A DNA stretch of 64,000 nucleotides from positions 1-64,000 of the forward strand of contig JAAPAO010000009.1 of the NCBI GenBank assembly GCA_013115145.1, written 5' to 3'. How positions within the stretch are numbered: position 1 is the stretch's first letter; the number at the start of each line of letters is the position of its first letter. The notes under the pieces are model-generated. The model searched no databases. It had not been told where the DNA came from and was given only the letters and a program-made list of their open reading frames with translations. Positions 15,610 to 54,693 of this stretch are shown piece by piece. The DNA comes from Perkinsus chesapeaki ATCC PRA-425 (Eukaryota > Protista > Perkinsozoa). Both the position numbers and the translations under genes were made by a program.

Positions 15610-16967
15610 ATGGTCGAATGGAGCAACAATGTCGCCTTAGCCATCGGCTTGACCTGCGCGGCAGGTAACTGCAAATATATCGTCTCTGATTGGAACTAGT
15701 CATCATGCAGGTCTCGCCTCGGTGATTGGATTCCTATTCGCATTCTTGCCCAAAGCAGGCACCCCCCAGTTCCTCGCTGGCTTCCTCGCTCTCTCTGCTG
15801 GAGTTATGACGTTTGTTAGCCTCGTTGAGATCTTCAGCGAAGCCGTTCACATGTAAGCTCCCTTCAGAGAGCCTACCTGAGAAGGACCCGCTGGAAAATT
15901 CTTGCAAGCTTGTGTCAAAGCTGTCCCTTGTTGATTGAGGACCAGCATGCGAAAACGTGGTGTAGATTGTTGTACGCTTGCTCGAGTTCGACTGTCTTGT
16001 CCATGGTGGTGACTTTGTAAATCACTCGGTCTGTCTTTGATATCCTTTCAATCATTCTGGGTCCATTCAGGCTTGGCGAATCCGGCTACACGGAGGAGCA
16101 TGCGACCAACATTACTATTGGTATCTTCTTTGCTGGCGTCCTCATCACTTTGGTATCGTTGAACACCTGCTTTGAGAATTCCCTTCGTACCCGCCTTCGC
16201 AGGTTCTAGACCTTGTCAGCCACTTTATCACTAGACACAAGGCAGCGCACAGCTCCACAATGGGCAGCCTCGAGGAGGGAGGGAGTCAGTCAACGATCGA
16301 CCCGTGTAATGCCGTACCTTTACAGGAGATGGCGAGCACTGCAGTCAGTTGTTTCACTGCTATCTACTCGCTCAATCGCATCATCTTCAGCAAGTGGTTC
16401 CGACGTGTCCCGCCCCGAACTCCGAAAGCCTCAAGAAGACTGGCATTCTCACCGCCGTAGCAGTTTGCCTCCACAACTTCCCCGAGGGAATTGCTACCTT
16501 CCTGGCGACTCTGGAGAACCCAGAGGCCGGCATCGCTCTGGCAATTGCAATTGGCATTCACAACATACCTGAGGGTACGGCCATCGGCTCATCCACGCGA
16601 ACCTTCCTACTGCCAGGTATCGCCATCGCAATTCCTGTCTACAGGGCGACCAACAGCAAACTTCAAGCATTTTTGTACACATTCGTTGCCGGAATAGCCG
16701 AGCCGATCGGTGGCATTCTGGCATGGCTAATCCTTGCTGACGTCATCGGCCCAGCTGTCATTGCTGTTATGTTGGCCTTAACCGCTGGAATCATGGTCAG
16801 CAATCGTCGCGTCGCTCACTTGGATCCCCTCTGTTCAGGTATACGTTGCCATCCTAAAGTTGCAGGCCCAAGCGGTTTTACACGACCCGAGCAACTTGTG
16901 GGCAGGCAACGGGTTCCTTTTCGGTATGGCCGTTATGGCTCTATCTCTTGTATTTTTCAACATCTAG
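15610..16967 (+). CDS. ZIP-family (ZupT-like) transporter, copy 6
   Basis: MVEWSNNVALAIGLTCAAG start; CLHNFPEG; GIHNIPEG; AEPIGG; ends VFFNI*. Confidence 0.9.
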
Positions 16968-17221
16968 TAGTGAGGCCTCTACTATCGAAACCCCGCTGCG
17001 GTTTACCTTGTCTAGTAGACGATGCCTAAGGTCAGATATCGATGGCAAAATGCCGTTATATTCACCTTGTGTCTATTACCATGGATACTTTGTTATCGGT
17101 TTATAGGCCACCAATGTGACCTCTTCGGATCTAAGAGAAGTCAGACCCTTATCGTCTTTATTGACATCCTCAGTCATTCCGTTTTTTGCGCAGTCAATGC
17201 AGGGAGCAGGTGATAGAATTA

Positions 17222-21842: not shown

Positions 21843-22832
21843 TTACACAACCGGACTATAAGATGAGATATTGTAGAGGCAGAAGCCTTGAATAAGCGCA
21901 GCATCTGTCGGGCATCGGAAGGTATCTTTACGAAAGAAAGCCTTAGATAGTGCGGTAGAGTCTTTGAATCTATGAGGCTTGTCGCGGAATACCTTCCCGA
22001 TAAAAAGCACCACTGAGTTGGCAACAAGGACTGATTCCGCCGTCTTAGCTAAGGCTTTCATTAGGGCAGGATGCCAAACATAGCTGACCATCTCTGGGTG
22101 GAATTCGACGCTGTACATAGGCGCCCTTCCCAGCCTCGACTCCATACTGGCGGAGAAGATTTTGTGATTGACGGGATCCTCGCTGGTGCTGGTCATCTTG
22201 AACTGTTTACGGAGTTCTTTGTGTATCTTCCACATTTCCGGTGGAACTCCGTTAGAGTGGATATTAGCAGTTACGTTCTGGGTCTCCAATATCTTTCTCA
22301 CAGCTCGGGGTAAGGACTTTAACATCTCTCCTCCCGCCTTAACAAATTTTATAGGAAGGGCAACATTGTTGGTGGTGTAGTTTCCCTCTGAAATAGCCTC
22401 GTGGGTTCCGGCGGCCAGAAGAGCAAGAAGCTGATGACCTTGACAAATACCAAAAATAGGGAAGGGGTCCTTCTTAGCATACCTGTCAACAGCATAGTCG
22501 TAGATCACTTTGGCCGCATCGACGTATGGATGACCGAAACGGAGGTCCTGATCGAGGCTACCCCCAGTGAATAGAACACCACTTATACTAGCTAGGAGGG
22601 ACTTTAGGTTAGGATCCTGGTAATGAAGAGGGATAGCTTGTATACCAGCACTTTCAAGATATTTCACATTATATTCTAGAATATAGGGGTGAGGTACGTA
22701 CTTAGTAGGAGGGTGAGCAAGTATACCAACCACTGGGCTTCGAGGGAAATCACCTTGCAGACCACGAAGTCCGATATGACCAGCTACAGGGATAGCAATG
22801 ATACAAAGATTTATCAATAGATGAGCCAGCAT
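21843..22832 (-). CDS. GGH: Gamma-glutamyl hydrolase (peptidase C26, class I GATase fold) with signal peptide; intronless
   Basis: PVVGILAHP, YVKYLESAG-like NVKYLESAG, GVLFTGG, nucleophile elbow PIFGICQGHQLL and FHPE catalytic His-Glu; hydrophobic N-terminus MLAHLLINLCIIAIPVAG. Confidence 0.85.
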   Translation of the reverse strand: MLAHLLINLCIIAIPVAGHIGLRGLQGDFPRSPVVGILAHPPTKYVPHPYILEYNVKYLESAGIQAIPLHYQDPNLKSLLASISGVLFTGGSLDQDLRFGHPYVDAAKVIYDYAVDRYAKKDPFPIFGICQGHQLLALLAAGTHEAISEGNYTTNNVALPIKFVKAGGEMLKSLPRAVRKILETQNVTANIHSNGVPPEMWKIHKELRKQFKMTSTSEDPVNHKIFSASMESRLGRAPMYSVEFHPEMVSYVWHPALMKALAKTAESVLVANSVVLFIGKVFRDKPHRFKDSTALSKAFFRKDTFRCPTDAALIQGFCLYNISSYSPVV

Positions 22833-36652: not shown

Positions 36653-39600
36653 TTAAAATGGGACCAGTCTGTTAGGATTGACCCTCTCAATATCCGAGAA
36701 TGAGAACGACTTGCTCTCTGATGATGACACTACAAGTGTCTGCTTTGATGGGGCGTCCTTGCGCGGATGATTAGCGTTGCCTCCAGAATAGGCCAGCACC
36801 GACGGGTCCAGCTCCACTCGACTGTACTCAGGCTGCCACATAGCATCCTGTATCAATTTACCGATATCATCAGGAGGACTGAAGGAGAGTTACGACCCTC
36901 GGGAAAAGCATTGATCACCACCTTATCTGCGCAATGCCCGTATCGAGAGCCTCCTTGACGCAGGCTACAGCAATGGCATGGGAGAGCTCACGAATCCTGT
37001 CTATTTGGGGGTACAAGAGGCCTTGGGCCAGATCCTACAGAGCCAGGCTGATTTTTACTATAAATTTTCCGTTAGATCCTACCGTTTCAGTAACCTTCTC
37101 GGAGAGGGTCTTGGCCGCCAGGTAGAACATAGTATCGGGGATGCTTTTGAACTTGCCCACAATTGCGGCCAGACCAACTCCGGGGAAGATGTACCTGAGC
37201 TTGTGTGAACCACGCAAGTTCGATCCCTGCCACCGACATGTTGTTGCCTTGTCCAGGAATGTAAGTCTTGCCGTTAAAAGAGACGGGCTTGAAGGGTGAG
37301 CCAGTGGCGACCCATGCCTCACCGTTGGTCCACCTAACGCGACCAGTGCCCCAATAACAAAGCGCCGGCGCTAACATGTAAAGTTGCTCTGGCGTAGCCT
37401 CGGCCTTAGGCGTCGGGTTCGACAAGGCGAAAATGACCGGTGCTGGACAGTGCGAGTGCATTTCCTGAGGAAAAGGTATATCCCGGAATCCCCAAGTCTG
37501 CATGATGATACTTTGATGATTTCCTCCGTGAGCGTACCAAACTGTCCACTGAGACCTAGCAGAACCGTAGGCTTCACAACTTGAACAACTTCTAGGAGAC
37601 TGTGGAGAGGCTCGTCATCTCTACAGAACCGGACCTAACACACGACCAAGAGTCGGGCCGCCCGTTCTCGAAGGGCGGAGAGTCGAGTTCCGTGACCAGT
37701 ATTGCAATTCTCTACAGCGGCCTGTATAGCGGCACTACACGATTATTCAAGGTAGGTAAAGCAGTTTGAGGTAACATGAACGCCTTGGATGACAATAGCG
37801 ACCAAGAGTGATAATGTACTAAGCCTGATGGTAATAGGCAGTTGAAATATCATCTGCAAAGGCACGGAAGCTATCACGGGAAAGACTTTCGATTGCCGCA
37901 CAGCGAAATTCTCAACGGAGTTACGACTAAGCGCTGAATGCGTTGCCTTCCTATCTTATATTAGAAAGGAAGCTACCTTGTGCTCTTGCAGCTCTCCGGG
38001 CCTTTTCGAGGTGACAAGCCCTCTGGAATCAACCAGCCAGAACCGCTGTCTGGCCTCCTCGATGGTAAGACCTTGCTGAACCATGGCCGCCACAATGCAA
38101 TCGGCCACTCCCACAGCGGCGGATCCGGCACCGAAGAAGACAATGCGCTGGTCAGCGAGAACCTCGTGCTTGGCCCTCATGGCCGTGAGAAGGCCGGCAA
38201 GGGCCACGGAACCCGTGCCCTGGATATCGTCGTTGAAGCATAGGATCTGATCCCTGTAGCGCTGCAGCAGAGGGAAGGCATGATCGTTGGTGAAGTCCTC
38301 AAACTGGATCAGGACGCCGGGCCAACGAGATCGAACAGCATCGACGAACTCGTCAACAACGGCGTAGTACTCCTCGCCGGTGATTCTGTTGTGACGCTCA
38401 CCGAGGTAGAAAGGATCACCGAGAAGGTCCTGGTTGTTGGTACCGATATCGATGACAACAGGTACAGTACGTCCAGGGTTAATACCAGCACAGGCAACAT
38501 AAAGGGAAAGCTTACCAATAGGGATGCCCATACCATTCGTACCAAGATCACCCAATCCAAGAATACGAGAACCATCGGTTACAACGATAATATCGGCATC
38601 ACGGACATTGCTGTTCCATACGACTTGTTTGAAGTTGCCTTTTTCAGAGAGATTGAAGTAGATACCGCGGGAGCCCCTAAATATTCTATCAAAGTCCTTA
38701 CAAGCCTCCCCAACAGACGGTGTGTAGACTATCGGCATCAAACGGGTAATGTTATCGAGCAGCAGACGGAAGTACAAGGTCTCGTTCCTATTGTGAACCC
38801 CCTCCAAGTAGATATAGCGGCCAATGTCAGTGTCCTTAGTATCCAACTGCTTGAGACATCTTTGCACTTGCACATCAATATCGAGCACCTTCGGCGGCAG
38901 TAACCCTACGAGACCTAGCTCTTCCCTTTCGACCTCGGTGAAGGCCTCGGCTTTGTTATATACCGGGTTTCTCATGAGGTGAAGGCCTCTCTCGTAGACA
39001 GTAGCCACCTTGCCCGACTCAGGACCAGATAATCTCACGCCCGGAGTGTTCATTGGATCGATGACGCCCATTTGGATTTGAAGCAGGACTTGTCTGGCCG
39101 AGTTAAGAAAAGCATCTCGAACCCGCTGTCCGGCCTTGGCGGAGGTCTCCATGAACAGAATGCCATTTGATCTAGCAAAGGTGGCGGCCTCCTCAGCAGG
39201 AACTTCACGACCGAGAAGATCGGCCTTGTTACCGATAAGAACCTTGGTGACGTTCTTGTTGAGAGTTGGTAGATTTTCCTTTATAAACTCGATAAGCTCC
39301 TCGTAGGTTTTACGCTGTCCGACGTCGTAAACAAAAAAGATAACGGCGGAGCCTCTGCAGTAGGACGCGGTGAACTTGCCCCACACAGTGTCCCAAATCT
39401 GCAGCTTCACTCTGTTCTCGTCTAGATTGATAATCGTCTTTGAAAACTCCACACAGTCGGTCGGAGTCGAGCTCACCCTAAAGACATTCTCGGTAAACAT
39501 CAACCTCAGATTCGTCTTCCCGACCCCGGGTGGGCCTACTAGGGCATACTGGAGGGCATGAGTCCAACGATGGAGGTGCGGCGAGGCGCTCTGGCGATGG

Positions 39601-39749
39601 TAGAGCTCAGCCAGGACCAAGTGGTACCATTCAATAAGGGCCTCGGTCGGCGCAGCGGCCACTATGTCGTCCATAGGTAGCATGCGAACATCAAAGTTGG
39701 CTTTACTGCCATTGGCAGCACCTTGCTGAACCACATTGATTGAGGGCAT
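36653..39749 (-). CDS. Rab2-like GTPase domain-malic enzyme fusion protein, copy 1
   Basis: One 597-codon uninterrupted frame contains [19 protein letters not shown] and ETSAK, then [47 protein letters not shown] and GAGSAAVG. Later short exons give [24 protein letters not shown] and MWQPEY. Confidence 0.9.
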
Positions 39750-40390: not shown

Positions 40391-43181
40391 CTACATGAAC
40401 TGGCTTGGGTTCACTCTCTCCATATCGGTGAACGAGAAGGCCTTGTTCTGAATGGTACCAACACTGAGCTTAGTTTTATCCTGACTAGGACCAACACCAG
40501 AGCCTTGGCCGGAGAAGGCGAAGACTGAGGGGTCCAACTCAGTGTGGGCGTATTCGGGCTGCCACATGTGATCCCAGACGAACTTGTCAAGATCGTCAGG
40601 TCGCCTAAAAAAGTGAAATTACGCACAACATAGTAGTAGTGAAAAGCTCACTTGATGCAGGCGATGCCGAGATCGAATGCCTCCTTGATGCATGCCACCG
40701 CAATGTCGTGAGAAAGTTCACGGATACGAGTGAGCTGAGGGTACAAAGTGCCGTGAGAGATATCCTCTGGGGTGACTCTCTCGGCAAGAGTCTTGGCGGC
40801 AGTGTAGAACATCGAATCAGGGATCCACTTGAACTTGCCAACAATACCGGCAAGACCGACACCAGGGAAGATGTACCTGATGAGAGACAAATAAATGGAC
40901 TAGAGATAAGGAGACGTCGCCCTACATGTTATTGCCCTGACCGGCCTTGTAGACCTTGCCATTGTAAGTAACAGGTCCGAAGGGGGAGCCGGTGCACACC
41001 CAAGCCTTACCCTCGGTCCACCTGAAGGGAGAATGAAATACAAGTCAACAACCAAGAGGAGTGACGGCTTACGTATAGAGCTGCTCGGGAGTTGCCTCGG
41101 CCTTCGGTGTGGGGTTGGAAAGAGCGAAGATGATTGGCTCTGGGCAGTTAGCGTACATTGCCTGAGAACCGAATACACAAATGTCTATCAGCACCTTTTA
41201 GCTACCTTAACAACGTCCTCAGTGAAGGAGCCAGATTGTCCACTAAGACCAAGAAGGACAGTGGGCTTGACACTCTTGACCACCTCGAGGAGGCTGGTCA
41301 TAGGCTCCTCGTCATCGCGGCAATAGGGAACCTGGAATAAGACTTAATCACTATCGAAAAGTCTTGAGCAAGTCTCACCTTATGGTCCTGCATAGTGCCA
41401 CCGCGCTTCCACGTAACAAGGCCCTTGGAATCGACGAACCAGAAACGCTTCCTGGCGTCCTCGGGCGTAAGACCATCATGAACCATGGCAGCAACAATGC
41501 AGTCGGCAATACCAATAGCAGCAGCACCGGCACCGAGGAAGACGATTCTCTGGTCCTCCAACTTCTCCTTCTTAACCTTCATAGCGCTCACAATACCGGC
41601 GAGAGCGACGGAACCAGTTCCCTGGATATCATCGTTGAAACATAGCATGCTCTCCTGATAACGCTTGAGAAGAGGGAAGGCATGATCGTTGGTGAAGTCC
41701 TCGAACTGGATCAGGACGCCGGGCCAACGAGACTTCACGGCATCGACAAACTCGTCAACAACGGCGTAGTACTCCTCACCATTGATCCTGCTGTGACGCT
41801 CACCGAGATACATGTCATCACCGAGAAGGTCCTGGTTGTTGGTACCGATATCGATAACAACAGGTACAGTACGTCCAGGGTTAATACCAGCACAGGCAAC
41901 ATAAAGGGAAAGCTTACCAATAGGGATGCCCATACCATTCGTACCAAGATCACCCAATCCAAGAATACGAGAACCATCGGTTACAACGATAATATCGGCA
42001 TCACGAACGGGACTGTTCCAAACCATCTGCTTGAAATTGCCTTTCTCGGATAAGTTGAAGTAAAGGCCGCGAGCGTTACGGAAGATATGACCGAACATCT
42101 GGCAAGCCTTACCGACCACAGGAGTGTAGACAATGGGCATCATCTCAGTAATATGGTCACAAAGCAACTTGAAGTAAAGAGTCTCGTTCCTGTCATGCAG
42201 ACTCTCCAAGTAAATGTACTTCTCAATATCATTGGAGTTCTGCAAGAACTGCTGATAGCACCTTCTGGACTGGACGTCGAGATCGAGCACCTTAGGAGGC
42301 AGGAGACCGACCAGACCAAGATCTTCACGCTCACTGTCGGTGAATGCTTCAGCCTTGTTAACAACTGAATTACGGAGAAGGTTGCTGCCGCGCTCGGTGA
42401 CAGTTTGAACCTTTCCGTCATTCCGGCCAGCAGAGCGGATACCCTTGGTGGCGTTGGGGTCTATCATGCCCATCTGGAGCTGCAAGAGTACTTGCCTGGC
42501 AGAGTTGAAGAAGCAGTCTCTGACATGAAGGCCGCTCTTGGCAGAGGTCTCCATGAACAACAAACCGTTCTCGCGGGCAAAACTGGCGGCTTCCTCAGCG
42601 GTCACTTCACGGCCGAGCAAATCAGCCTTGTTGCCGATAAGAACCTTAGTAGTAGATCTGTCGAGTGAGGGAAGAGTGTCATTGATGAACTTGACCAATT
42701 CGTCGTAGGTATCACGCCTTGTGAGATCATATACGAAGAATATGATAGCTGCACCATGGCAATATGAAGAGGTGTACTTGCCCCAGACAGTATCCCACAT
42801 CTGAAGCTTCAGTCTCTCATTGTCGATGTTGACAATGGTCTTGGAGAATTCGACACCCTTAGTAGGAGTTGAGGCAACCCGGAAAACATTCTCAGTAAAC
42901 ATGAGTCTTAGATTAGTCTTTCCCACACCAGAGGGGCCAACGAGGGCATACTGGAGGGAATAGGACCAATCGTGGAGATGGCGAGAGGTAGTCTGTCGCT
43001 GGTAGAGCTCAGAAGTGAGAAGATGGTACCACTCAATCAGAGCCTCAGTGGGAGCCGCGGCGACAATATCCTGCATAGGTAGCAGGCGCACATCAAAGTT
43101 GGCCTTGCAGTTGACCGTCTGAACGCGGGTAGGCACAGAGAGCGATGCTGATGCAGACTTCTTAACAGTATTAGATGCCAT
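40391..43181 (-). CDS. Rab2-like GTPase domain-malic enzyme fusion protein, copy 2
   Basis: One 627-codon uninterrupted frame contains [22 protein letters not shown] and ETSAK, then all malic enzyme core motifs ([13 protein letters not shown]). Later exons give [24 protein letters not shown] and end ERVNPSQFM*. Confidence 0.9.
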
Positions 43182-47613: not shown

Positions 47614-48393
47614 CTAAGCCATGGCGGCATCTTGACAGCACTGGTTCCTAACACAGTAACCAGTGGTGTAACCGTAGAGATCGGCCAAACTTGCAACCAT
47701 GCCACGTCCATACTGCCTATCAATATTGAAATAAGCACAGAACGCTTTTAGATCATCTCGAACACGCCTTAAGTTACAGAGGAATCTGACTCTGTCATAA
47801 GCAAACCTCTCAACACGGGGTAGAACATCTTTGGTACACGTGGTAACAGACCTATAGGTTACCCGGGGGCAATAAGGGAAGTTCACGAGGTTGACAAGCC
47901 GGCCCGGAATGATCGGATTGAAGAACGAGTCGTAGGCATTCCTCGACGAGCACTTATTGTCTTCGATGCAGGTGGCAGTAGCAAGTTGACGAGAACGAGA
48001 GCGGTGGGACAGATAACCATTAAAAAATTGGTCGAGAGAAGCAATCCTTCTTTGTAGGAAATCGCAGAACCTTTTAGCTGTATCCAAGGCGAGCGGGCCC
48101 AGGCATGCTTCACGGACTTGCTGCACGAAGAAGTTGGTCGTCGATGAGCTGAACACCTCCACACATTTGCCGCATGAAGAATAGCGATCGGCCCTTCTCA
48201 GCGTGTCACCGTCGACTTGCTCTACCAATGAGCGCAAGTTACTAGGTGGGAAAGGGTGGGCCTCGATCACGTCATCGACGAAGTTGTGGACTTCTGGGTC
48301 ACCGAGTAGAGCAGTTAAGTTACCAATAGCACTGTCGTCGGTCTGGCCTGGGGCCATCACGAGCATACTTAGGATGAGTAGAGGAGATATCAT
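47614..48393 (-). CDS. Secreted protein with two tandem saposin-like domains, copy 1 (intronless)
   Basis: Signal peptide MISPLLILSMLVMAPG; CxxC...C...C...CxxxxxC spacing (CGKC, REAC, RFC, TCIEDNKC); a second six-Cys unit follows. Confidence 0.75.
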   Translation of the reverse strand: MISPLLILSMLVMAPGQTDDSAIGNLTALLGDPEVHNFVDDVIEAHPFPPSNLRSLVEQVDGDTLRRADRYSSCGKCVEVFSSSTTNFFVQQVREACLGPLALDTAKRFCDFLQRRIASLDQFFNGYLSHRSRSRQLATATCIEDNKCSSRNAYDSFFNPIIPGRLVNLVNFPYCPRVTYRSVTTCTKDVLPRVERFAYDRVRFLCNLRRVRDDLKAFCAYFNIDRQYGRGMVASLADLYGYTTGYCVRNQCCQDAAMA

Positions 48394-50478
48394 TATTGTT
48401 GAGTAAAAAGATGGACAACCCGGTGGTCTGTAACAGCATCAAAGGACAAGACCTCCCCAGGTGATACACTTGATCTAGCCACAAGCACAACTAGTCAGAA
48501 ACCCCCTCGGCGAGGACTCTCTATTGCCAACTACGATGGGCAAAACTCCAATGCCAAGCAACACTCCTGGGCATACAAGCGTGACGCCTTGGCGATGGCG
48601 CAATGCTCCGGTGTCTCGGATCCCTGTATGTTGGGATATTTGCCCTTTCGGAAGGGGCTTCGCAGTAGAGCCTCGTTTAGATATCTCTCTTGATTTACTG
48701 CTCGATAATCATACGTTGCTTCACCAGATTCAGCTCACCTACTGATACCACCGTGCGCATGCAACGTCCACCAGTACCCTGAGTATAGGGGACATCTCTG
48801 ACCACACGACGACATTTTTGTAAGTCGTTAGGCACTCTAATCTTGGGACCCACACAACCACTCCTGGAACTCAGAAGTAGATTGCCTACTTATAGATCTA
48901 CATTTGCAGCGACGGGCATTCATGGTCGAGAGCACTGCTCTTCCAGCTGCATAGGTACCACGAGGAATACCTGTGTCACTAAGTGACATCTCCAACATGG
49001 AAATCATATCAATGGCGCCAGTGACGCACCAAGTATGCAAGTCCACCGAATCGAGACGAGCATCGAGCATTTTACCGCAAGCAAGGCTCCGTCAGCAGCG
49101 TAATTATTACAAGGTCGACAACCAGGCATAATACAAGATACATTCGTCGAGCAGCAGCTAGGACTCGTCCGCTCAAACTTATGTGACGAGCGATGCCGTG
49201 CTGGGGTGTACGCTAAACTTGTTATCGTGAGCTCCGAGTGCATTACACCGGCCAATCATGGTATTTCAAATTCTTGAATGGGTGTAGCCAGTAGGAAGGC
49301 TTCGGATTGGACGAGCCACGATCCGTATCAAGGCCGTATAAGCCCTTGGCTTATTCCGGCAATCAAGGGCAATTGCGTCCATATTCCGGGCTAGGCCGCC
49401 CAGTTCTTACGCTCCGCGGCTTCAACCTCACTGCCTCAACTAAAAGTAGTGCCCTTGAGTAGACATAACAGAACAGCCGTATATGCTGTATCGTTGTATG
49501 TTCTTAGACCCAAATCCTTGACGAGAACTCCTTGAGCTATTATAGGTGTTACTGTCGCGTCATCATGTCTGCGTCATGTCTGCACCGTGTCAGCTCGTTA
49601 TCATTGATCATTCATGATCCATCATATCTTTTTTTATTTAGACTATGCCTTCTCAGCCTAGCGCGTCACGGTGAAGACACAACCGCTGTTCAAAGAAATC
49701 AGGCTTTTATCTCACTACCTTTTCAGCAACCCGTAGCCTAATGACTGTACCTACGTTTTCGTAATCCCCAAAAGCTAGCCGTTTGGTTCATGGTATGTAT
49801 GGGTCATGCCCGAGGTCACAAACTCTTCGAGCTAGGCATTTCAGCCGTGCTAATCGAGCTGAGGCGACGTCTCCCTACTACAAGTTGTTAATACCCATGC
49901 CCCATACCCAATACCCACACCCATTATCCTGGTCGCTGACCGGCAGCCAGTGCCCAAATGAAATATGATGAGCCACTGGAAGACTTGAGAAAACGGGGTA
50001 GGTCGGTCTGAGGCTCAGGCCCTGAGCTGCCCAAATATGTCGGGAACCTCTTGAGCTGCTCTGGGACCGGCTCCCAATGAGCTTGGCTGAGGAGCAAGCT
50101 GGTCATAGCCACTGAACTAAACCCTTATATGGATTAAACCAGAAAAAATGAGTTTAACTTTAGTAGGCCTTGTGTAATAGGCCACCTCTAGCTTTGAGTT
50201 TTCAGGGCCTAGATTCTTTCCGTAGATATCTCTATCGAATAAAAAAGCAGCAACCGAGACCGAAACGTCTGGAGTTGGTCTGCTGCAGGGTCGTCACGAC
50301 CCGGTCGTGATAAATCATAAGTAATGATTCACCAGACAACAGATATCCACGTGAATGACATGACATAGAGGACATACCTTATACCGACTAATTATCTCCC
50401 TAAGAGGGTCGAATTAAATATTTGACGAATATACCGCTTTTAAAAGCTTTCTATCTTATTTAGCGAGCCTACGACATA

Positions 50479-51273
50479 TCACTTGCATTTACCGCTTACA
50501 CAGTAACCTATAACATATTTGAAGATGTCAACATAGCTTGTAAGAAGGCCACGACCAAAATCTTTATCAAGTACATAATAACCACAAAACTCTTCCAGTT
50601 CACCTTTAGCGTACTTCGAATGACATATATAATCAACTTGGGCGGCAGCAAACTGTTCCAGAAGCGGTAGAACAGTTCTGGAACACGCAGAAAATGTAGC
50701 ATTTGGGCGATACGGACAGAAGGAAATCTGTGTAAAATCGACGAGCCGAGCCGGAATGATCGGGTCGACGAACGAGTTAAAAGCTTTGCCAGACGGACAC
50801 TTGCCATCCCCGATGCAGGTAGCAATAGCAAGTTGAGGAGAGCGAGAGCGACCTAAGAGATAACCATTAAAGAATTGATTGAGAGGAGCGATGCCCATCT
50901 CCAGGTACTCGCAGAAAGTTTTCACTAGATTCGACACCATACCGTGACCACACGCTTTACGGACTTGGTTTACGAAGAAGTTGGTCGTCGGCGTGGTGTG
51001 AATCTTCACACACTTGTCACAGAGAGGGTAGTCGTTATTCTTCCTCGCCATTTCTGGGTCCATCTCATTATGGACTCCAAGTAACGATCGTAAACTGGTA
51101 AGTGCAACAGGCCGCGTTTCTCCGAGCACGCCGTCGACGAAGCGGCAGACTTCAGGCTCGGCGAGTAAAGCTGTTAGGCTATCAATGACGCTATCCGTAG
51201 GACTCCCATCAGACTGGCCGAAGGCTCTCACCAGCAAGCTGCAGATGATAAGAAAGGGAGGGGCCGTCATCAT
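50479..51273 (-). CDS. Secreted double saposin-like protein, copy 2 (intronless)
   Basis: Likely start MMTAPPFLIICSLLVRAFG at 51273; same Cys skeleton; shares TTNFFVxQV, QFFNGYL and PIIPARLV with the other copies. Confidence 0.75.
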   Translation of the reverse strand: MMTAPPFLIICSLLVRAFGQSDGSPTDSVIDSLTALLAEPEVCRFVDGVLGETRPVALTSLRSLLGVHNEMDPEMARKNNDYPLCDKCVKIHTTPTTNFFVNQVRKACGHGMVSNLVKTFCEYLEMGIAPLNQFFNGYLLGRSRSPQLAIATCIGDGKCPSGKAFNSFVDPIIPARLVDFTQISFCPYRPNATFSACSRTVLPLLEQFAAAQVDYICHSKYAKGELEEFCGYYVLDKDFGRGLLTSYVDIFKYVIGYCVSGKCK

Positions 51274-52821
51274 TATACGAGGGGCCACGACAATGCTGCA
51301 ATGATGAAAAGGACGACAGCAATATGTCGCCATAACTACAACTTTGCAAGTTGCGACAACCCGAACGATAGCCAATTACGCGAGCAGTTCCGACAGATGT
51401 TTCGAATGGCATAATTACAGTCTGTAATTTACAGATGGCGTATCAGAAGTCTAGAAGCCCTTTTACGAACGTTCAGGCTTTAGGTGGTTTTCTGGATATA
51501 CGAATTGCGGCTTCACTGAATGGCGTCGCGGCGAAGTGCTCCGACGGCGCAGCGCCTTCAAGGATGGAAAGCATTTGATACAGTTTTGAGTAACAACGCA
51601 GGTTCCACGCCTAGGCTTGTCTACCGGCCGAGCCACCATGCATGAATAGCTCTTCAGTTACTCTCATGGATGCTTGCTATAACGACTTTACCTGTGTCAC
51701 GCGTCTCGATAGGATCAGCAGATAACCGTCTCAAAAGCAGACAAACCGTTATCCTGTCACTGCAGTTGTCTGGCAACGGCTGCTGGCACCTATGCTGGTT
51801 CTCAATAGGTTGTATGCAGGCTATCAATGCAGAAGGGGAGTAGTCTGATTGCAGATATATATATGCCCTTAGGCCTACACCACAGGCCACGCCTGCGTAG
51901 TATTAGCGAAAGAGATGTACTGGTGAAAGCTTGAGCGCGAAACTCTCGTGGAGAGAGGCAGTCCGCAGACATAGTGGTCCACTGTGTCCGTGTCGTCTTA
52001 TGTGGGACATGTTTATTGTGTGGCCATCATCCGTATCCAAGGCCGAAGTGATTAATGGTACAGTGTTAACTAACAAAAGTCACTGGTGGTCACTTCGAGA
52101 ATCGGTCTCTGCCAGATGGGTACCGGGCAGCTTAGTCAGCCGTTACTTGACGCAGCAAGCTTCTCATTTTGGTGGAGACGGTCACCGGCTCGTAGACAGC
52201 ACTCACTGTCCCAGACGTCGACAGGCGACTTGCTGAACCTCTCTAAGTCGCAGTCAACAGGCGATTGTGTGAATTCATAAGACTCTTTAGGTCCGCAATG
52301 ACTAAAAGCCGCAAGCAAATCATAGGAGTGTATGGCAAATGATGTGATGCAATGGAGCAGCGCTGATAAATAGCGACAGACTGGTCCTTGACACACTTTT
52401 TACAGGTTGTAGAACAGCTCCACAACTGGGGGCTCTTAATATGATTTTCAACGCTTACCTAGTAGTTTGAGACGCGAGACGAACGTAAGTGTAACATTGA
52501 TGAATTATTGACCCGTTGGTGTACCTTGGTCCCCTTGAAGCCGAGGAAATGAATCCGGCGATTCGTGGGTTATGGTGCCCCACAGTTGGCAGTAATAATC
52601 TATACACCGTCTACGTGAATACGAACTGAGCACTGCAACCCAATTGCAAATCACTCAACTCATGAACAACCACTTGGTATTTCATATCACGTCAGTACGA
52701 GCGCAAAATTTATAGAATCAGCAATAGGTTCACTTTGACTCGATAATACCTCCGCATATGTACACCTTGTTAATTTACCACTCGGTGGATGTAGTTCCAG
52801 TGGGCTGTGAGATGAGAGTTG

Positions 52822-52843
52822 ACCCTAGCCAACTTGGCTCAAG
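52822..52843 (+). other. Relict spliced-leader (SL) sequence
   Basis: ACCCTAGCCAACTTGGCTCAAG vs the Perkinsus 22-nt SL ACCGTAGCCATCTTGGCTCAAG (recalled from the literature) gives 20/22 identity. It is followed by CT rather than a GT donor, then a short U-rich leader and an ATG. Confidence 0.75.
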
Positions 52844-53913
52844 CTTTGTGTTTGTTGCGTTGTACTATGACTGACGACCCACCCGGGAGAAACGGACCTG
52901 CTACTAACATGACTACTTCAGTCCCTCGATGGGCAAGCGCGCCCTCCAGATAGGAACTATGACGTGGAGCAGGAATGTGAGACCCTCAAGCAGCTTCGGT
53001 ATGATTGACACTCCTGAGCCGTGAAATGCTATGTCTCTCGTTTTTGCGGTGAGGGCAGTTCAGGCATCGCCAATGATGAGTGCCTTCTGACAAATCACTA
53101 TTGTGTCTCGGCTACCGAGACCAAATATTGAAAAATACATCACATTGTTATGTACTTCATACAGAATGCTCTTCACAAGTGATGATTACCAACTATTGCT
53201 TGAGTAGTTGATACGCCGAGAGAAAGCTCATATTTCATTATTCAGGAGACGTGTCACATACGTCGGGCAGCCTCTCTAAGATCACGACGTGATAGATCGC
53301 CCCGCGATCATCGCGATCGAGATCGCGGCTTCTCTGAGCCATTCAACTAGCCCGAAGTAACAACTAACGCCGACATATCATGCTCACCAACAATGTTCGT
53401 GCATGCTGAAAAGTCGATCATCGTTTGAGGGGAGGGAAAGGAGTCTCAAGCCACCACAAGGGTGTAAGAGACCACTGACTCCAGGATACCTGTACGTTAG
53501 CCCACATTGTTGGGCAATGCCCGGCAGGGAAACGTTTTCTCCGTATTTGCGCTATTTGCAATGTTTAACGGGTTATCTGCATACACATGTTACAATCTGC
53601 AGTTTAGCCCTTGTCCTTATTCCGTTGTTCAAACCGATATCTACCTTTCAGGGGATTCGACTGGAAGGAGCTCAACATAATCCCAATTGAATTAGGGAAA
53701 CCTTAGCCGTTGGCCACGCTTGAGCTAACAGCTGCAGCTGCGCTGTGGCTTTGATAGCCATCTACTATAGTGTGCCACGGAATAGATAGGGATTCGTCAG
53801 ATGACGCATATCGAAAGAAGGGGAAAAACGCTGACTACGACACAGATGATGCACCATGTGCTGTAGATATAATCCTTAGAGGACGCTCCTGGCTTATTGA
53901 TGTCGCTGTGGCT

Positions 53914-54693
53914 TTAGCATCGATCTCTTGCACAGTAACCAGCGGCAAATGCGAACAGATCGACGTAGCTTGTAACCAGACCACGGCCAAAAGACTTGTC
54001 AAGCATATAATATTCGCAGAACTCTTGTAGATCACCTCTAACGTATTCGCCATGGCAGACGCGCTCAACGCTCTCAGCAGCAAAGCTTTCCATTTTTGGT
54101 AGGACATCGCTCGAGCAATCAGTAAAAGTATCATAAGCGCAATACGGACAAAAGGAGAACTGGGAGAGATCGACAAGCTGAGCCGGAATGATCGGGTTAA
54201 GGAAAGAGCTGAAGGCGTTTCTTGCCGGACACTTCCCATCCTCGATGCAGGTAGCGATAGCAAGTTGACGAGCACGAGAACGATGGAAAAGATATCCATT
54301 AAAGAACTGATCCAGAGAAGCGATGTCATCTTCCAAGCGGATACAAAACGACCGCGCACGAGTCGAGTGGAACGGTCCTTGGCACGCTCTATGGACTTGC
54401 TGAACGAAGAAGTTGGTTGTCGAAGTGGAGTAGATCTCTACACACTTAGCGCAGAGAGGATAGCTTCCCGCTCGCCTCAGAACGCCACCGTCGAAGTGTT
54501 CAACCAGTGAGCGCACATTCCTAGTCGGGACCGGATTGGCCTCGATGACGCCGTCGACGAAGTTACGGACTTCGGCCTCGCCGAGAAGAGCCGTTAGGTT
54601 ACCAATAGCACTGTCGGTAGGAACTTCGTCTGCCTGAGCTGAAACGTTTACGAGCATGCTGCAGATGATGAAAAATGAAGCGATCATAATCAT
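53914..54693 (-). CDS. Secreted double saposin-like protein, copy 3 (intronless CDS)
   Basis: Signal peptide MIMIASFFIICSMLVNVSA; CAKC, HRAC, SFC, TCIEDGKC; second unit ends GYCARDRC*. Confidence 0.75.
   Translation of the reverse strand: MIMIASFFIICSMLVNVSAQADEVPTDSAIGNLTALLGEAEVRNFVDGVIEANPVPTRNVRSLVEHFDGGVLRRAGSYPLCAKCVEIYSTSTTNFFVQQVHRACQGPFHSTRARSFCIRLEDDIASLDQFFNGYLFHRSRARQLAIATCIEDGKCPARNAFSSFLNPIIPAQLVDLSQFSFCPYCAYDTFTDCSSDVLPKMESFAAESVERVCHGEYVRGDLQEFCEYYMLDKSFGRGLVTSYVDLFAFAAGYCARDRC

What the first reader, a model, noticed from the sequence alone, without database searches (positions are those of the whole stretch)
47614..54693. Three-gene family of secreted double-saposin-like proteins in a repeat-rich island
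Seen: three intronless ~260-aa paralogs about 2-2.5 kb apart, each with a signal peptide, an acidic pro-like segment and two six-Cys units. Unit 1 has CxxC-x~20-C-x~12-C-x~31-C-x5-C. Knowledge: this spacing is the hallmark of saposin-like proteins (SAPLIPs), which include amoebapores, naegleriapores, NK-lysin and lipid-transfer saposins. Inference: candidate membrane-lytic or lipid-scavenging effectors of a parasite. I am not aware of this family being described.
Basis: partly seen in the sequence, partly recalled or inferred. Interest (0 to 1): 0.75.

Follow-up and report, generated by a model that had tools for sequence, protein, structure and literature searches.

The report
Divergent double saposin-like secreted proteins
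Three neighbouring genes of the shellfish parasite Perkinsus chesapeaki encode secreted proteins made of two disulfide-stapled helical modules that look like very distant, permanently "open" relatives of the lipid-binding saposins. They belong to an unnamed family that is spread over many protists, not to a three-gene parasite invention.

Summary
Three intact single-exon paralogs lie on the minus strand (47614-48393, 50479-51270, 53914-54693; 46-58% identical). Each has a hydrophobic N-terminus and twelve conserved Cys in two homologous six-Cys units.

It is not a three-gene family. The genome (Perkinsus chesapeaki) holds at least 11 members. A full HMMER search finds 132 clusters, in P. marinus, P. 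olseni, Digyalum, Tetraselmis, Ancoracysta and many unnamed contigs.

"Repeat-rich island" is not supported.

The saposin reading is supported only by several weak lines that agree:
- the Cys pattern;
- co-loss of Cys pairs that fits 1-6, 2-5, 3-4 bonds;
- a confident four-helix model of unit 1 (pLDDT 91.8);
- a Foldseek top list dominated by saposins, none significant;
- language-model neighbours;
- a UniProt "Saposin B-type domain" label on a P. marinus member;
- an ML lipid-domain fusion in a distant member.

No Pfam SapB match and no sequence match to a solved structure exists.

Most likely these are divergent saposin-like lipid-binding proteins (about 0.6). A lytic effector role is less likely.

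The parts
47614..48393 (-). Paralog 1, 259 aa, single exon. The public gene model (P0002, 247 aa) starts at an internal Met and misses the signal-like N-terminus.
47947..48174 (-). Paralog 1, unit 1 (six-Cys four-helix domain, C1 to C6)
   Evidence: domain HMM hit E 5e-12
47632..47880 (-). Paralog 1, unit 2 (six-Cys domain; its C1 lies 10 residues before C2)
48220..48234 (-). RSLVE (RxLxE) motif in the linker between the N-terminal helices and unit 1 of paralog 1
50479..51270 (-). Paralog 2, 263 aa (identical to the public model P0003). The open frame extends upstream to 51375. It has RSLLG in place of RxLxE.
50794..51021 (-). Paralog 2, unit 1
   Evidence: E 1.2e-14
50482..50727 (-). Paralog 2, unit 2
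53914..54693 (-). Paralog 3, 259 aa (identical to the public model P0001). This copy was used for both structure predictions.
54226..54453 (-). Paralog 3, unit 1. The AlphaFold2 model has pLDDT 91.8 and four helices.
53917..54159 (-). Paralog 3, unit 2
54499..54513 (-). RSLVE (RxLxE) motif of paralog 3, at the start of the low-confidence linker (residues 61-65)
54538..54618 (-). Conserved N-terminal two-helix segment of paralog 3 (residues 26-52; pLDDT 88-90). It carries an N-L-T sequon.

Best explanation
The three ORFs are real, intact, single-exon paralogous genes of Perkinsus chesapeaki.

Each encodes an ER-targeted, all-alpha protein of about 260 aa, built from:
- a signal peptide;
- a conserved two-helix N-terminal segment;
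- a flexible linker, which carries RxLxE in two of the three copies;
- two homologous ~80-aa four-helix domains, each stapled by three nested disulfides (C1-C6, C2-C5, C3-C4).

The domain is best read as a very divergent saposin-like (SAPLIP) module. The C2-C3 segment is shortened to 19-20 residues, so helices 1 and 2 form one long helix. The module is then held in the extended 'open' shape that saposins adopt when they bind lipid or dimerise.

Two such open units in one chain, together with the N-terminal hairpin, most likely pack against each other as an intramolecular pseudo-dimer. This would bury or load a hydrophobic face. The proteins would then bind, solubilise or transfer lipids in the endolysosomal or secretory pathway, or outside the cell.

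Shown here: the genes, their paralogy, the Cys architecture, the internal duplication, the family size and its distribution.

Inferred: the fold class, the disulfide pairing, secretion, the domain pairing and the lipid function.
For: Genes and paralogy:
- Complete ORFs, 46-58% identical, with pN below pS in every pair (omega 0.25-0.32, dS above 1).

Internal duplication:
- Units 1 and 2 align with all six Cys in register.
- hhalign of 99 unit-1 against 99 unit-2 sequences gives 99.8% probability, E 1e-29.

Disulfide topology, from 244 complete domains:
- C1 and C6 are both present in 177, C1 alone in 37, C6 alone in 4, and both absent in 26 (odds ratio 31).
- C2 and C5 are lost together in two clusters and never singly.
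- C3 and C4 are always present.
- Four P. chesapeaki unit 2s lack exactly C1 and C6.

Fold:
- The unit-1 model has pLDDT 91.8 and pTM 0.75, with helices at 6-30, 36-46, 50-63 and 66-76.
- About half of the listed Foldseek hits in the PDB are saposins A-D, proSP-B domains and the AOAH saposin domain.
- The whole-protein model is all-alpha with pTM 0.72.

Independent leads:
- The ESM-Atlas nearest named clusters are SapB_1/SapB_2 and ARMET_N (scores 0.81-0.83).
- UniRef names the P. marinus relative P0009 'Saposin B-type domain-containing protein'.
- Two family members give weak ARMET_N hits, and two carry an ML lipid-recognition domain. One of these is P0026, with an ML domain plus four units.

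Other:
- No canonical SapB match was found in the genome (an insensitive search).
- The SAPLIP definition used is four to five helices joined by mostly three disulfides (PMC11542183).
Against: - No statistically significant link to saposins exists. There is no Pfam SapB_1/SapB_2 hit, even at E up to 10, for any of the 132 members.
- No saposin appears in profile searches of PDB sequences, whether with the 3-, 132- or 21-sequence profile.
- Foldseek E-values are 2.3 or worse, with TM 0.29-0.38.
- Foldseek's amino-acid term rewards aligned Cys, so its saposin-rich list is not independent of the Cys pattern. The UniProt label probably is not either: on my own knowledge it comes from a PROSITE profile.
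- The atlas scores are below the 0.9 level at which such hits count as more than leads.
- The spacings differ from classical saposins: C2-C3 is 19-20 against about 27, and C4-C5 is 27-31 against about 24 (the saposin figures are from my own knowledge).
- The helical hydrophobic moments are not distinctive.
- Coordinates of the models could not be inspected. Disulfide geometry and domain packing are therefore unverified.
- There is no expression or secretion data.
Confidence: 0.6

Rival explanations
1. These are pore-forming or lytic SAPLIP effectors of the amoebapore, naegleriapore, NK-lysin or Dictyostelium Apl kind. The precursor would be cut into single ~80-aa peptides that permeabilise host haemocyte or bacterial membranes at acid pH.
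For: - It shares the saposin-like features of the best explanation.
- Two-domain prosaposin-like precursors that yield pore-forming peptides are known in Dictyostelium (AplE, AplK; PMC11542183).
- The genus has expanded the family by tandem duplication (window x3, C1884 x2).
- Constraint is relaxed in the youngest pair (omega 0.65 at dS 0.24).
- The paralogs differ widely in charge (mature pI 5.3, 6.8 and 8.6).
Against: - The two-unit architecture is conserved as such in 117 of 142 family proteins, and the whole chain is modelled as one compact body (pTM 0.72). This argues against release of single peptides.
- The linker between the units is conserved (NPIIP) and has no dibasic processing site.
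- The units are not strongly cationic (pI 4.5-9.1).
- The family occurs in green algae and other free-living protists.
- The ML-domain fusion points to lipid handling.
Confidence: 0.15
2. This is an unrelated family of secreted, disulfide-stapled helical proteins whose Cys pattern converged on the saposin one. Its function would have nothing to do with lipids, for example a cell-wall or matrix component, an adhesin, or a binder of a host protein.
For: - All sequence-based tests for saposin homology were negative.
- The structural scores are within noise.
- The model has one 25-residue helix where saposins have two.
- The amphipathicity test was negative.
Against: - Several partly independent weak signals all name the same superfamily and no other.
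- The alignment to open saposins is colinear over the full length (72 of 73 residues of 6vze).
- The inferred disulfide nesting is the saposin one.
- There are ML-domain fusions and weak ARMET_N hits.
Confidence: 0.23
3. These are chance ORFs or decaying pseudogenes with no product.
Against: - Three ORFs of 259-263 codons have no stops.
- Twelve Cys are invariant.
- pN is well below pS.
- There are homologs in three Perkinsus species and 132 clusters overall, many on ~1-kb contigs of the length of single transcripts.
Confidence: 0.02

Closest known systems
Saposins A-D / prosaposin (saposin B-type domain; Pfam SapB_1 + SapB_2)
   Same: - A domain of about 80 aa with four helices.
- C-x2-C at the start and C-x5-C at the end.
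- Inferred nested 1-6, 2-5, 3-4 disulfides.
- Several domains in one secreted precursor.
- The best structural matches are the open, lipid-binding or dimer conformers (4ddj, 5u85, 2qyp).
   Different: - No Pfam or PDB sequence match.
- The C2-C3 segment is about 7 residues shorter, so helices 1 and 2 are modelled as one helix.
- The C4-C5 segment is longer.
- There is a fixed two-domain architecture with its own N-terminal helical hairpin, and no SapA-type domains.
SAPLIP domains of pro-surfactant protein B (PDB 6vze, 6vz0, 6vyn)
   Different: The score is within the noise for helical proteins. It is a vertebrate protein with a different precursor architecture.
Dictyostelium prosaposin-like AplE and AplK (two SAPLIP domains per precursor; PMC11542183)
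   Same: They are protist secreted precursors with two saposin-like domains, and have low sequence identity to other SAPLIPs.
   Different: The Apl domains are recognised as saposin B domains and model as the closed 'folded leaf'. They are processed to single pore-forming peptides that are active at pH 4.4. Nothing of that kind is shown here.
Amoebapores, naegleriapores, NK-lysin, granulysin (pore-forming SAPLIPs)
   Same: The six-Cys helical module, and a possible role in attack on or defence against other cells.
   Different: Those act as single ~77-aa peptides, often cationic or switched by a His. Here the two units stay joined in the family, the charge is unremarkable, and free-living algae carry the family.
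MANF/CDNF N-terminal domain (Pfam ARMET_N), a saposin-like fold
   Same: - Weak Pfam hits in two family members (best E 0.001).
- It is an ESM-Atlas neighbour.
- It shares the C-x2-C start and the C3-x12-C4 spacing (the latter from my own knowledge).
   Different: The hits are below the Pfam cut-off and were not seen for the window's proteins. MANF has one such domain followed by a SAP-like domain.

Membership tests
Saposin-like proteins (SAPLIP; saposin B-type domain) | A domain of about 80 residues with six Cys in the order C-x2-C ... C-x~10-C ... C-x5-C | tested here: met
   Unit 1 reads C-x2-C-x19-C-x12-C-x31-C-x5-C in all three copies. The family consensus over 284 domains is C-x2-C-x19-C-x11-C-x27-C-x5-C (from the Cys positions 1, 4, 24, 36, 64 and 70 of the domain HMM), with an extra Cys between C3 and C4 in 46% of them. 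Unit 2 of the window proteins has C-x10-C and C-x4-C at the ends. The inner spacings differ from classical saposins.
Saposin-like proteins (SAPLIP; saposin B-type domain) | Three nested disulfides: 1-6, 2-5, 3-4 | tested here: met
   The evidence is indirect only. C1 and C6 are co-absent in 26 of 244 domains (odds ratio 31). C2 and C5 are lost together twice and never singly. C3 and C4 are invariant. Four own-genome unit 2s lack exactly C1 and C6. One exception is C1884b unit 1, which has Tyr at C3 with C4 kept. Model coordinates and chemistry were not available.
Saposin-like proteins (SAPLIP; saposin B-type domain) | Four to five alpha-helices (PMC11542183) | tested here: met
   The AlphaFold2 unit-1 model has pLDDT 91.8 and four helices. 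The same helices appear in the whole-protein model, for both units.
Saposin-like proteins (SAPLIP; saposin B-type domain) | A significant sequence match to SapB_1/SapB_2 profiles or to a solved saposin | tested here: not met
   There is no Pfam SapB hit at E up to 10 for the window proteins or for any of the 132 members. No saposin appears in PDB profile searches. Only a source name 'Saposin B-type domain-containing protein' exists, on the relative P0009.
Saposin-like proteins (SAPLIP; saposin B-type domain) | Significant three-dimensional similarity to a solved saposin fold | tested here: inconclusive
Saposin-like proteins (SAPLIP; saposin B-type domain) | Binding or perturbation of lipids or membranes | not testable with these tools
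   There is context only: an ML lipid-recognition domain is fused to family units in P0026 and in one other member. The hydrophobic-moment test was not distinctive.
Pore-forming SAPLIPs (amoebapore / NK-lysin type) | A mature single-domain peptide of about 77 aa, released from its precursor | tested here: inconclusive
   117 of 142 family proteins keep two units. The linker between the units is conserved and has no dibasic site. The whole chain is modelled as compact. Processing itself cannot be tested here.
Pore-forming SAPLIPs (amoebapore / NK-lysin type) | A strongly cationic surface or a pH-switch His that gives lytic activity | tested here: not met
   Unit pI ranges from 4.5 to 9.1 and mature protein pI from 5.3 to 8.6. 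Activity is not testable.
PEXEL/TEXEL-type processed secretory proteins of apicomplexans | RxLx[EQD] a few tens of residues after the signal peptide, cleaved by an ER or Golgi aspartyl protease | tested here: inconclusive
   The motif sits at the same aligned position in paralogs 1 and 3, both C1884 copies, P. marinus P0007 and P. olseni P0008. It is absent in paralog 2 and in C791. Cleavage, and the existence of the protease in Perkinsus, were not tested.

The most novel reading that the evidence does not exclude
The family is a distinct, so far unnamed branch of the saposin-like superfamily in which the module is locked open. Two modules in one chain would form a ready-made lipid shell, a single-chain equivalent of the saposin B dimer or the saposin A disc. 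In Perkinsus this branch would have replaced canonical saposins. It would also have expanded into a genus-specific set of secreted proteins that are matured at a PEXEL-like RxLxE site and used to strip or scavenge lipids from the host haemocyte vacuole.
Probability: 0.15. Interest if true: 0.7.

Novelty: new variant of a known kind. Interest (0 to 1): 0.42.

Why it matters
Few virulence or nutrient-uptake factors of Perkinsus are known, although it is a major pathogen of oysters and clams. A secreted, expanded family of lipid-binding proteins would be a concrete candidate for lipid scavenging, or for membrane attack inside host haemocytes.

More generally, the family (132 clusters, with no Pfam model) would widen the saposin-like superfamily with a fixed two-module, apparently constitutively open design. 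That is of interest for how saposins open, pair and carry lipid.

If the saposin link fails, the result is still an unannotated, widespread family of secreted protist proteins with a defined disulfide architecture.

Tried and rejected
- Pfam on the three proteins and on all 132 relatives, at E 0.01 and at E 10: no SapB.
- PDB sequence searches with three profiles: only spurious hits, to Fab, threonine aldolase and ribosomal protein L33.
- Word-based homolog search with the whole protein: only the window's own three proteins.
- Word-based homolog search with a 21-unit domain alignment, to find single-domain bridges to canonical saposins: nothing scored.
- Search of the own genome for SapB_1, SapB_2 and the Saposin family PF20825: nothing, but the first-look filter found no candidates and the controls were silent, so this is weak evidence of absence.
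- Fold search with the whole-protein model: no useful match.
- Hydrophobic-moment test for amphipathic helices: only one of ten helices stands out.
- Tandem and dispersed repeat searches for the 'repeat-rich island': negative, except for one 160-bp element.
- Literature: no paper joins Perkinsus with saposin, saposin-like with alveolate, or cites the P. marinus accessions.
- A profile-profile comparison with a true saposin alignment could not be run. No tool gave me canonical saposin sequences by reference, and I did not type any from memory.
- Model coordinates are not exposed. SG-SG distances and the packing of the two units could not be checked.
Full report
**What is in the sequence**

The minus strand carries three complete ORFs at 47614-48393 (259 aa), 50479-51270 (263 aa) and 53914-54693 (259 aa). 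The open frame of the second runs upstream to 51375, but the start at 51270 aligns with the paralogs. It also equals the public model P0003. The public model for copy 3, P0001, equals the ORF. The model for copy 1, P0002, starts at an internal Met and lacks the hydrophobic N-terminus.

The three proteins are 46-58% identical, and 12 Cys are invariant among them. The gaps between the genes are 2085 and 2643 bp.

At the DNA level only the coding regions still resemble each other. This fits synonymous divergence above 1 between the copies. In every pair pN is below pS, with omega 0.25-0.32, which is unreliable at this saturation. The genes are therefore old, intact duplicates under purifying selection.

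The N-termini are strongly hydrophobic and are followed by small-residue sites such as VSA/QA. This is a heuristic, since no SignalP was available.

The phrase "repeat-rich island" does not hold:
- there are no tandem repeats in 40-64 kb;
- the spacer 48400-50470 is unique in the genome;
- the other spacer holds one ~160-bp dispersed element at 52753-52915, with four other copies in the genome.

**Organism and family size**

Relatives returned by the searches carry NCBI names from Perkinsus chesapeaki: FOL47 locus tags, KAF4669359.1, KAF4650300.1 and KAF4651572.1.

The 41.7-Mb assembly holds at least 11 members:
- the three in the window;
- a tandem pair on C1884;
- single genes on C791, C2812, C323 and C1412;
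- a tandem pair on C48.

An exhaustive HMMER search with an eight-sequence profile found 132 clusters (at 50% identity) with E up to 1e-3, of which 55 have E up to 1e-10. Named sources are:
- P. marinus (XP_002786128, XP_002780660) and P. olseni;
- Digyalum oweni, a relative of the apicomplexans;
- the green algae Tetraselmis astigmatica and T. chui;
- the predatory protist Ancoracysta twista.

The rest are unnamed contigs of about 1 kb.

The window's genes belong to a divergent subfamily found only in Perkinsus here. The members on C323 and C48 score best against the broad profile. The word-based search found nothing closer than the three window proteins themselves. The triplet therefore looks like an expansion, or a fast-evolving set, in the P. 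chesapeaki lineage.

**Domain architecture**

A domain HMM built from the two units finds 284 domains in 142 proteins, and 117 of these proteins have exactly two.

Units 1 and 2 align with all six Cys and a conserved Gly in register. A profile-profile comparison of 99 first units with 99 second units gives 99.8% probability and E 1e-29. Both sets were collected with one HMM, so this number is somewhat circular.

The family consensus is C-x2-C-x19-C-x11-C-x27-C-x5-C, read from the Cys positions 1, 4, 24, 36, 64 and 70 of the domain HMM. A further Cys sits between C3 and C4 in 46% of the domains.

**Disulfide topology**

- C1 and C6 are both present in 177, C1 alone in 37, C6 alone in 4, and both absent in 26 (odds ratio 31).
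- C2 and C5 are absent together in two different clusters and never singly.
- C3 and C4 are always present.

Four P. chesapeaki second units lack exactly C1 and C6. This is the signature expected of nested 1-6, 2-5, 3-4 bonds, which is the saposin arrangement. The sequences are related, so the P values are not true probabilities. One copy, C1884b unit 1, has Tyr at C3 with C4 retained.

**Fold**

The whole protein, predicted with only eight sequences, is all-alpha (pLDDT 72.5, pTM 0.72). It has two confident N-terminal helices (26-37 and 40-52), a low-confidence linker (59-76), and the same four-helix pattern in both units. It has no useful match in the PDB.

Unit 1 alone, predicted with a 135-row alignment, gives a confident model (pLDDT 91.8, pTM 0.75). 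Its helices are at 6-30, 36-46, 50-63 and 66-76.

Foldseek finds no match with E up to 1e-3. About half of the listed entries are nevertheless saposins A, B, C and D, the N- and C-terminal SAPLIP domains of proSP-B, and the saposin domain of AOAH (E 2.3-10, TM 0.29-0.38).

A VIA re-alignment of those chains ranks open conformers first:

My reading is as follows. The long first helix equals saposin helices 1 plus 2. C1 and C2 sit at its start and C3 at its end. The C2-C3 segment is only 19-20 residues, against about 27 in saposins (the latter from my own knowledge). The next two helices equal the kinked helix 3, and the last equals helix 4. That is an extended, open saposin.

**Other leads**

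- The nearest named clusters in the ESM Atlas are SapB_1/SapB_2 families for the whole protein, and SapB plus ARMET_N for unit 1. The scores are 0.81-0.83, below the level at which they count as more than leads.
- UniRef calls the P. marinus relative P0009 a "Saposin B-type domain-containing protein".
- Among the 132 relatives, two give weak ARMET_N hits (best E 0.001) and two carry an ML lipid-recognition domain. P0026 has an ML domain followed by four family units.

**What argues against**

Every sequence test for saposin homology failed:
- Pfam at E up to 10 on all 132 members;
- three profile searches of PDB sequences;
- a domain-level word search for single-domain bridges.

The hydrophobic moments of the helices are unremarkable.

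**Function**

SAPLIPs are defined by four to five helices held by mostly three disulfides. They range from lipid-degradation cofactors to pore formers (PMC11542183).

I favour a non-lytic lipid-binding or lipid-transfer role, with the two open units pairing within one chain, for these reasons:
- the two-unit architecture is kept throughout the family;
- the chain is modelled as one compact body;
- the charge is ordinary (mature pI 5.3-8.6);
- free-living algae and predators have the family;
- an ML domain is fused to it in some members.

A lytic role is not excluded. The expansion in Perkinsus, the relaxed constraint in the youngest pair (omega 0.65) and the spread of charge among the paralogs would fit interaction with the host.

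**A motif worth noting**

RxLx[EQD] lies at the same aligned position, in the poorly conserved linker before unit 1, in:
- paralogs 1 and 3;
- both C1884 copies;
- P. marinus P0007;
- P. olseni P0008.

It is absent from paralog 2 and from C791. It resembles the PEXEL/TEXEL cleavage motif of apicomplexans. Whether it is cut is unknown.

**Verdict**

The saposin-like interpretation is the best available but unproven (about 0.6). The parasite-effector reading is weaker.

The family has no Pfam model and no literature. I class it as a new variant of a known kind.

Noticed in passing
window 52753-52915: A dispersed element of about 160 bp lies between paralogs 2 and 3. It has four other copies in the genome (83-93% identity; on C3349, C72, C3237 and C3476).
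   Followed up: partly
window 37956-39749 and 41298-43181 (minus strand): Two neighbouring ORFs join a Ras/Rab-type GTPase domain to malic enzyme (Pfam Ras E 3e-35, malic E 3.5e-69 and better). The scan has already reported this.
   Followed up: no
window 48220-48234 and 54499-54513; also L004, L005, P0007, P0008: A PEXEL-like RxLx[EQD] motif (RSLVE, RSLRE, RELEE, RSLRD) sits at one aligned position in the linker before unit 1. It is conserved across three Perkinsus species but is missing in paralog 2 (RSLLG) and in the C791 copy.
   Followed up: partly
L005:1729-1989 (G000 contig C1884, second copy): Unit 1 of this paralog has Tyr where all the others have C3, while its presumed partner C4 is kept. 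This would leave a free Cys, or it may be a sequencing error or the start of decay.
   Followed up: no
P0026 (821 aa; unnamed Logan/ENA contig): This distant family member carries an ML (MD-2-related lipid-recognition, NPC2-like) domain at residues 135-249, followed by four family units. One more member has an ML domain at E 6.8e-16.
   Followed up: partly
L008, L010, L011, L018 (G000 contigs C323, C48, C1412): In these P. chesapeaki members, which match the broad family profile better than the window subfamily does, unit 1 has seven Cys (an extra one in C-x4-C-P) and unit 2 has only four (C1 and C6 both missing). The partner of the seventh Cys is unknown.
   Followed up: no
window 54595-54603 (paralog 3, residues 31-33, N at 32) and the equivalent site in paralog 1: An N-[LF]-T glycosylation sequon lies in the first N-terminal helix. 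It is present in paralogs 1 and 3 and in both C1884 copies, and is lost in paralog 2 (DSLT).
   Followed up: no
window 21843-22832 (minus) and 16349-17029 (plus): These are ordinary neighbours. One is a class-I glutamine amidotransferase / peptidase C26 ORF. The other is a ZIP zinc-transporter fragment, probably one exon of a spliced gene.
   Followed up: no
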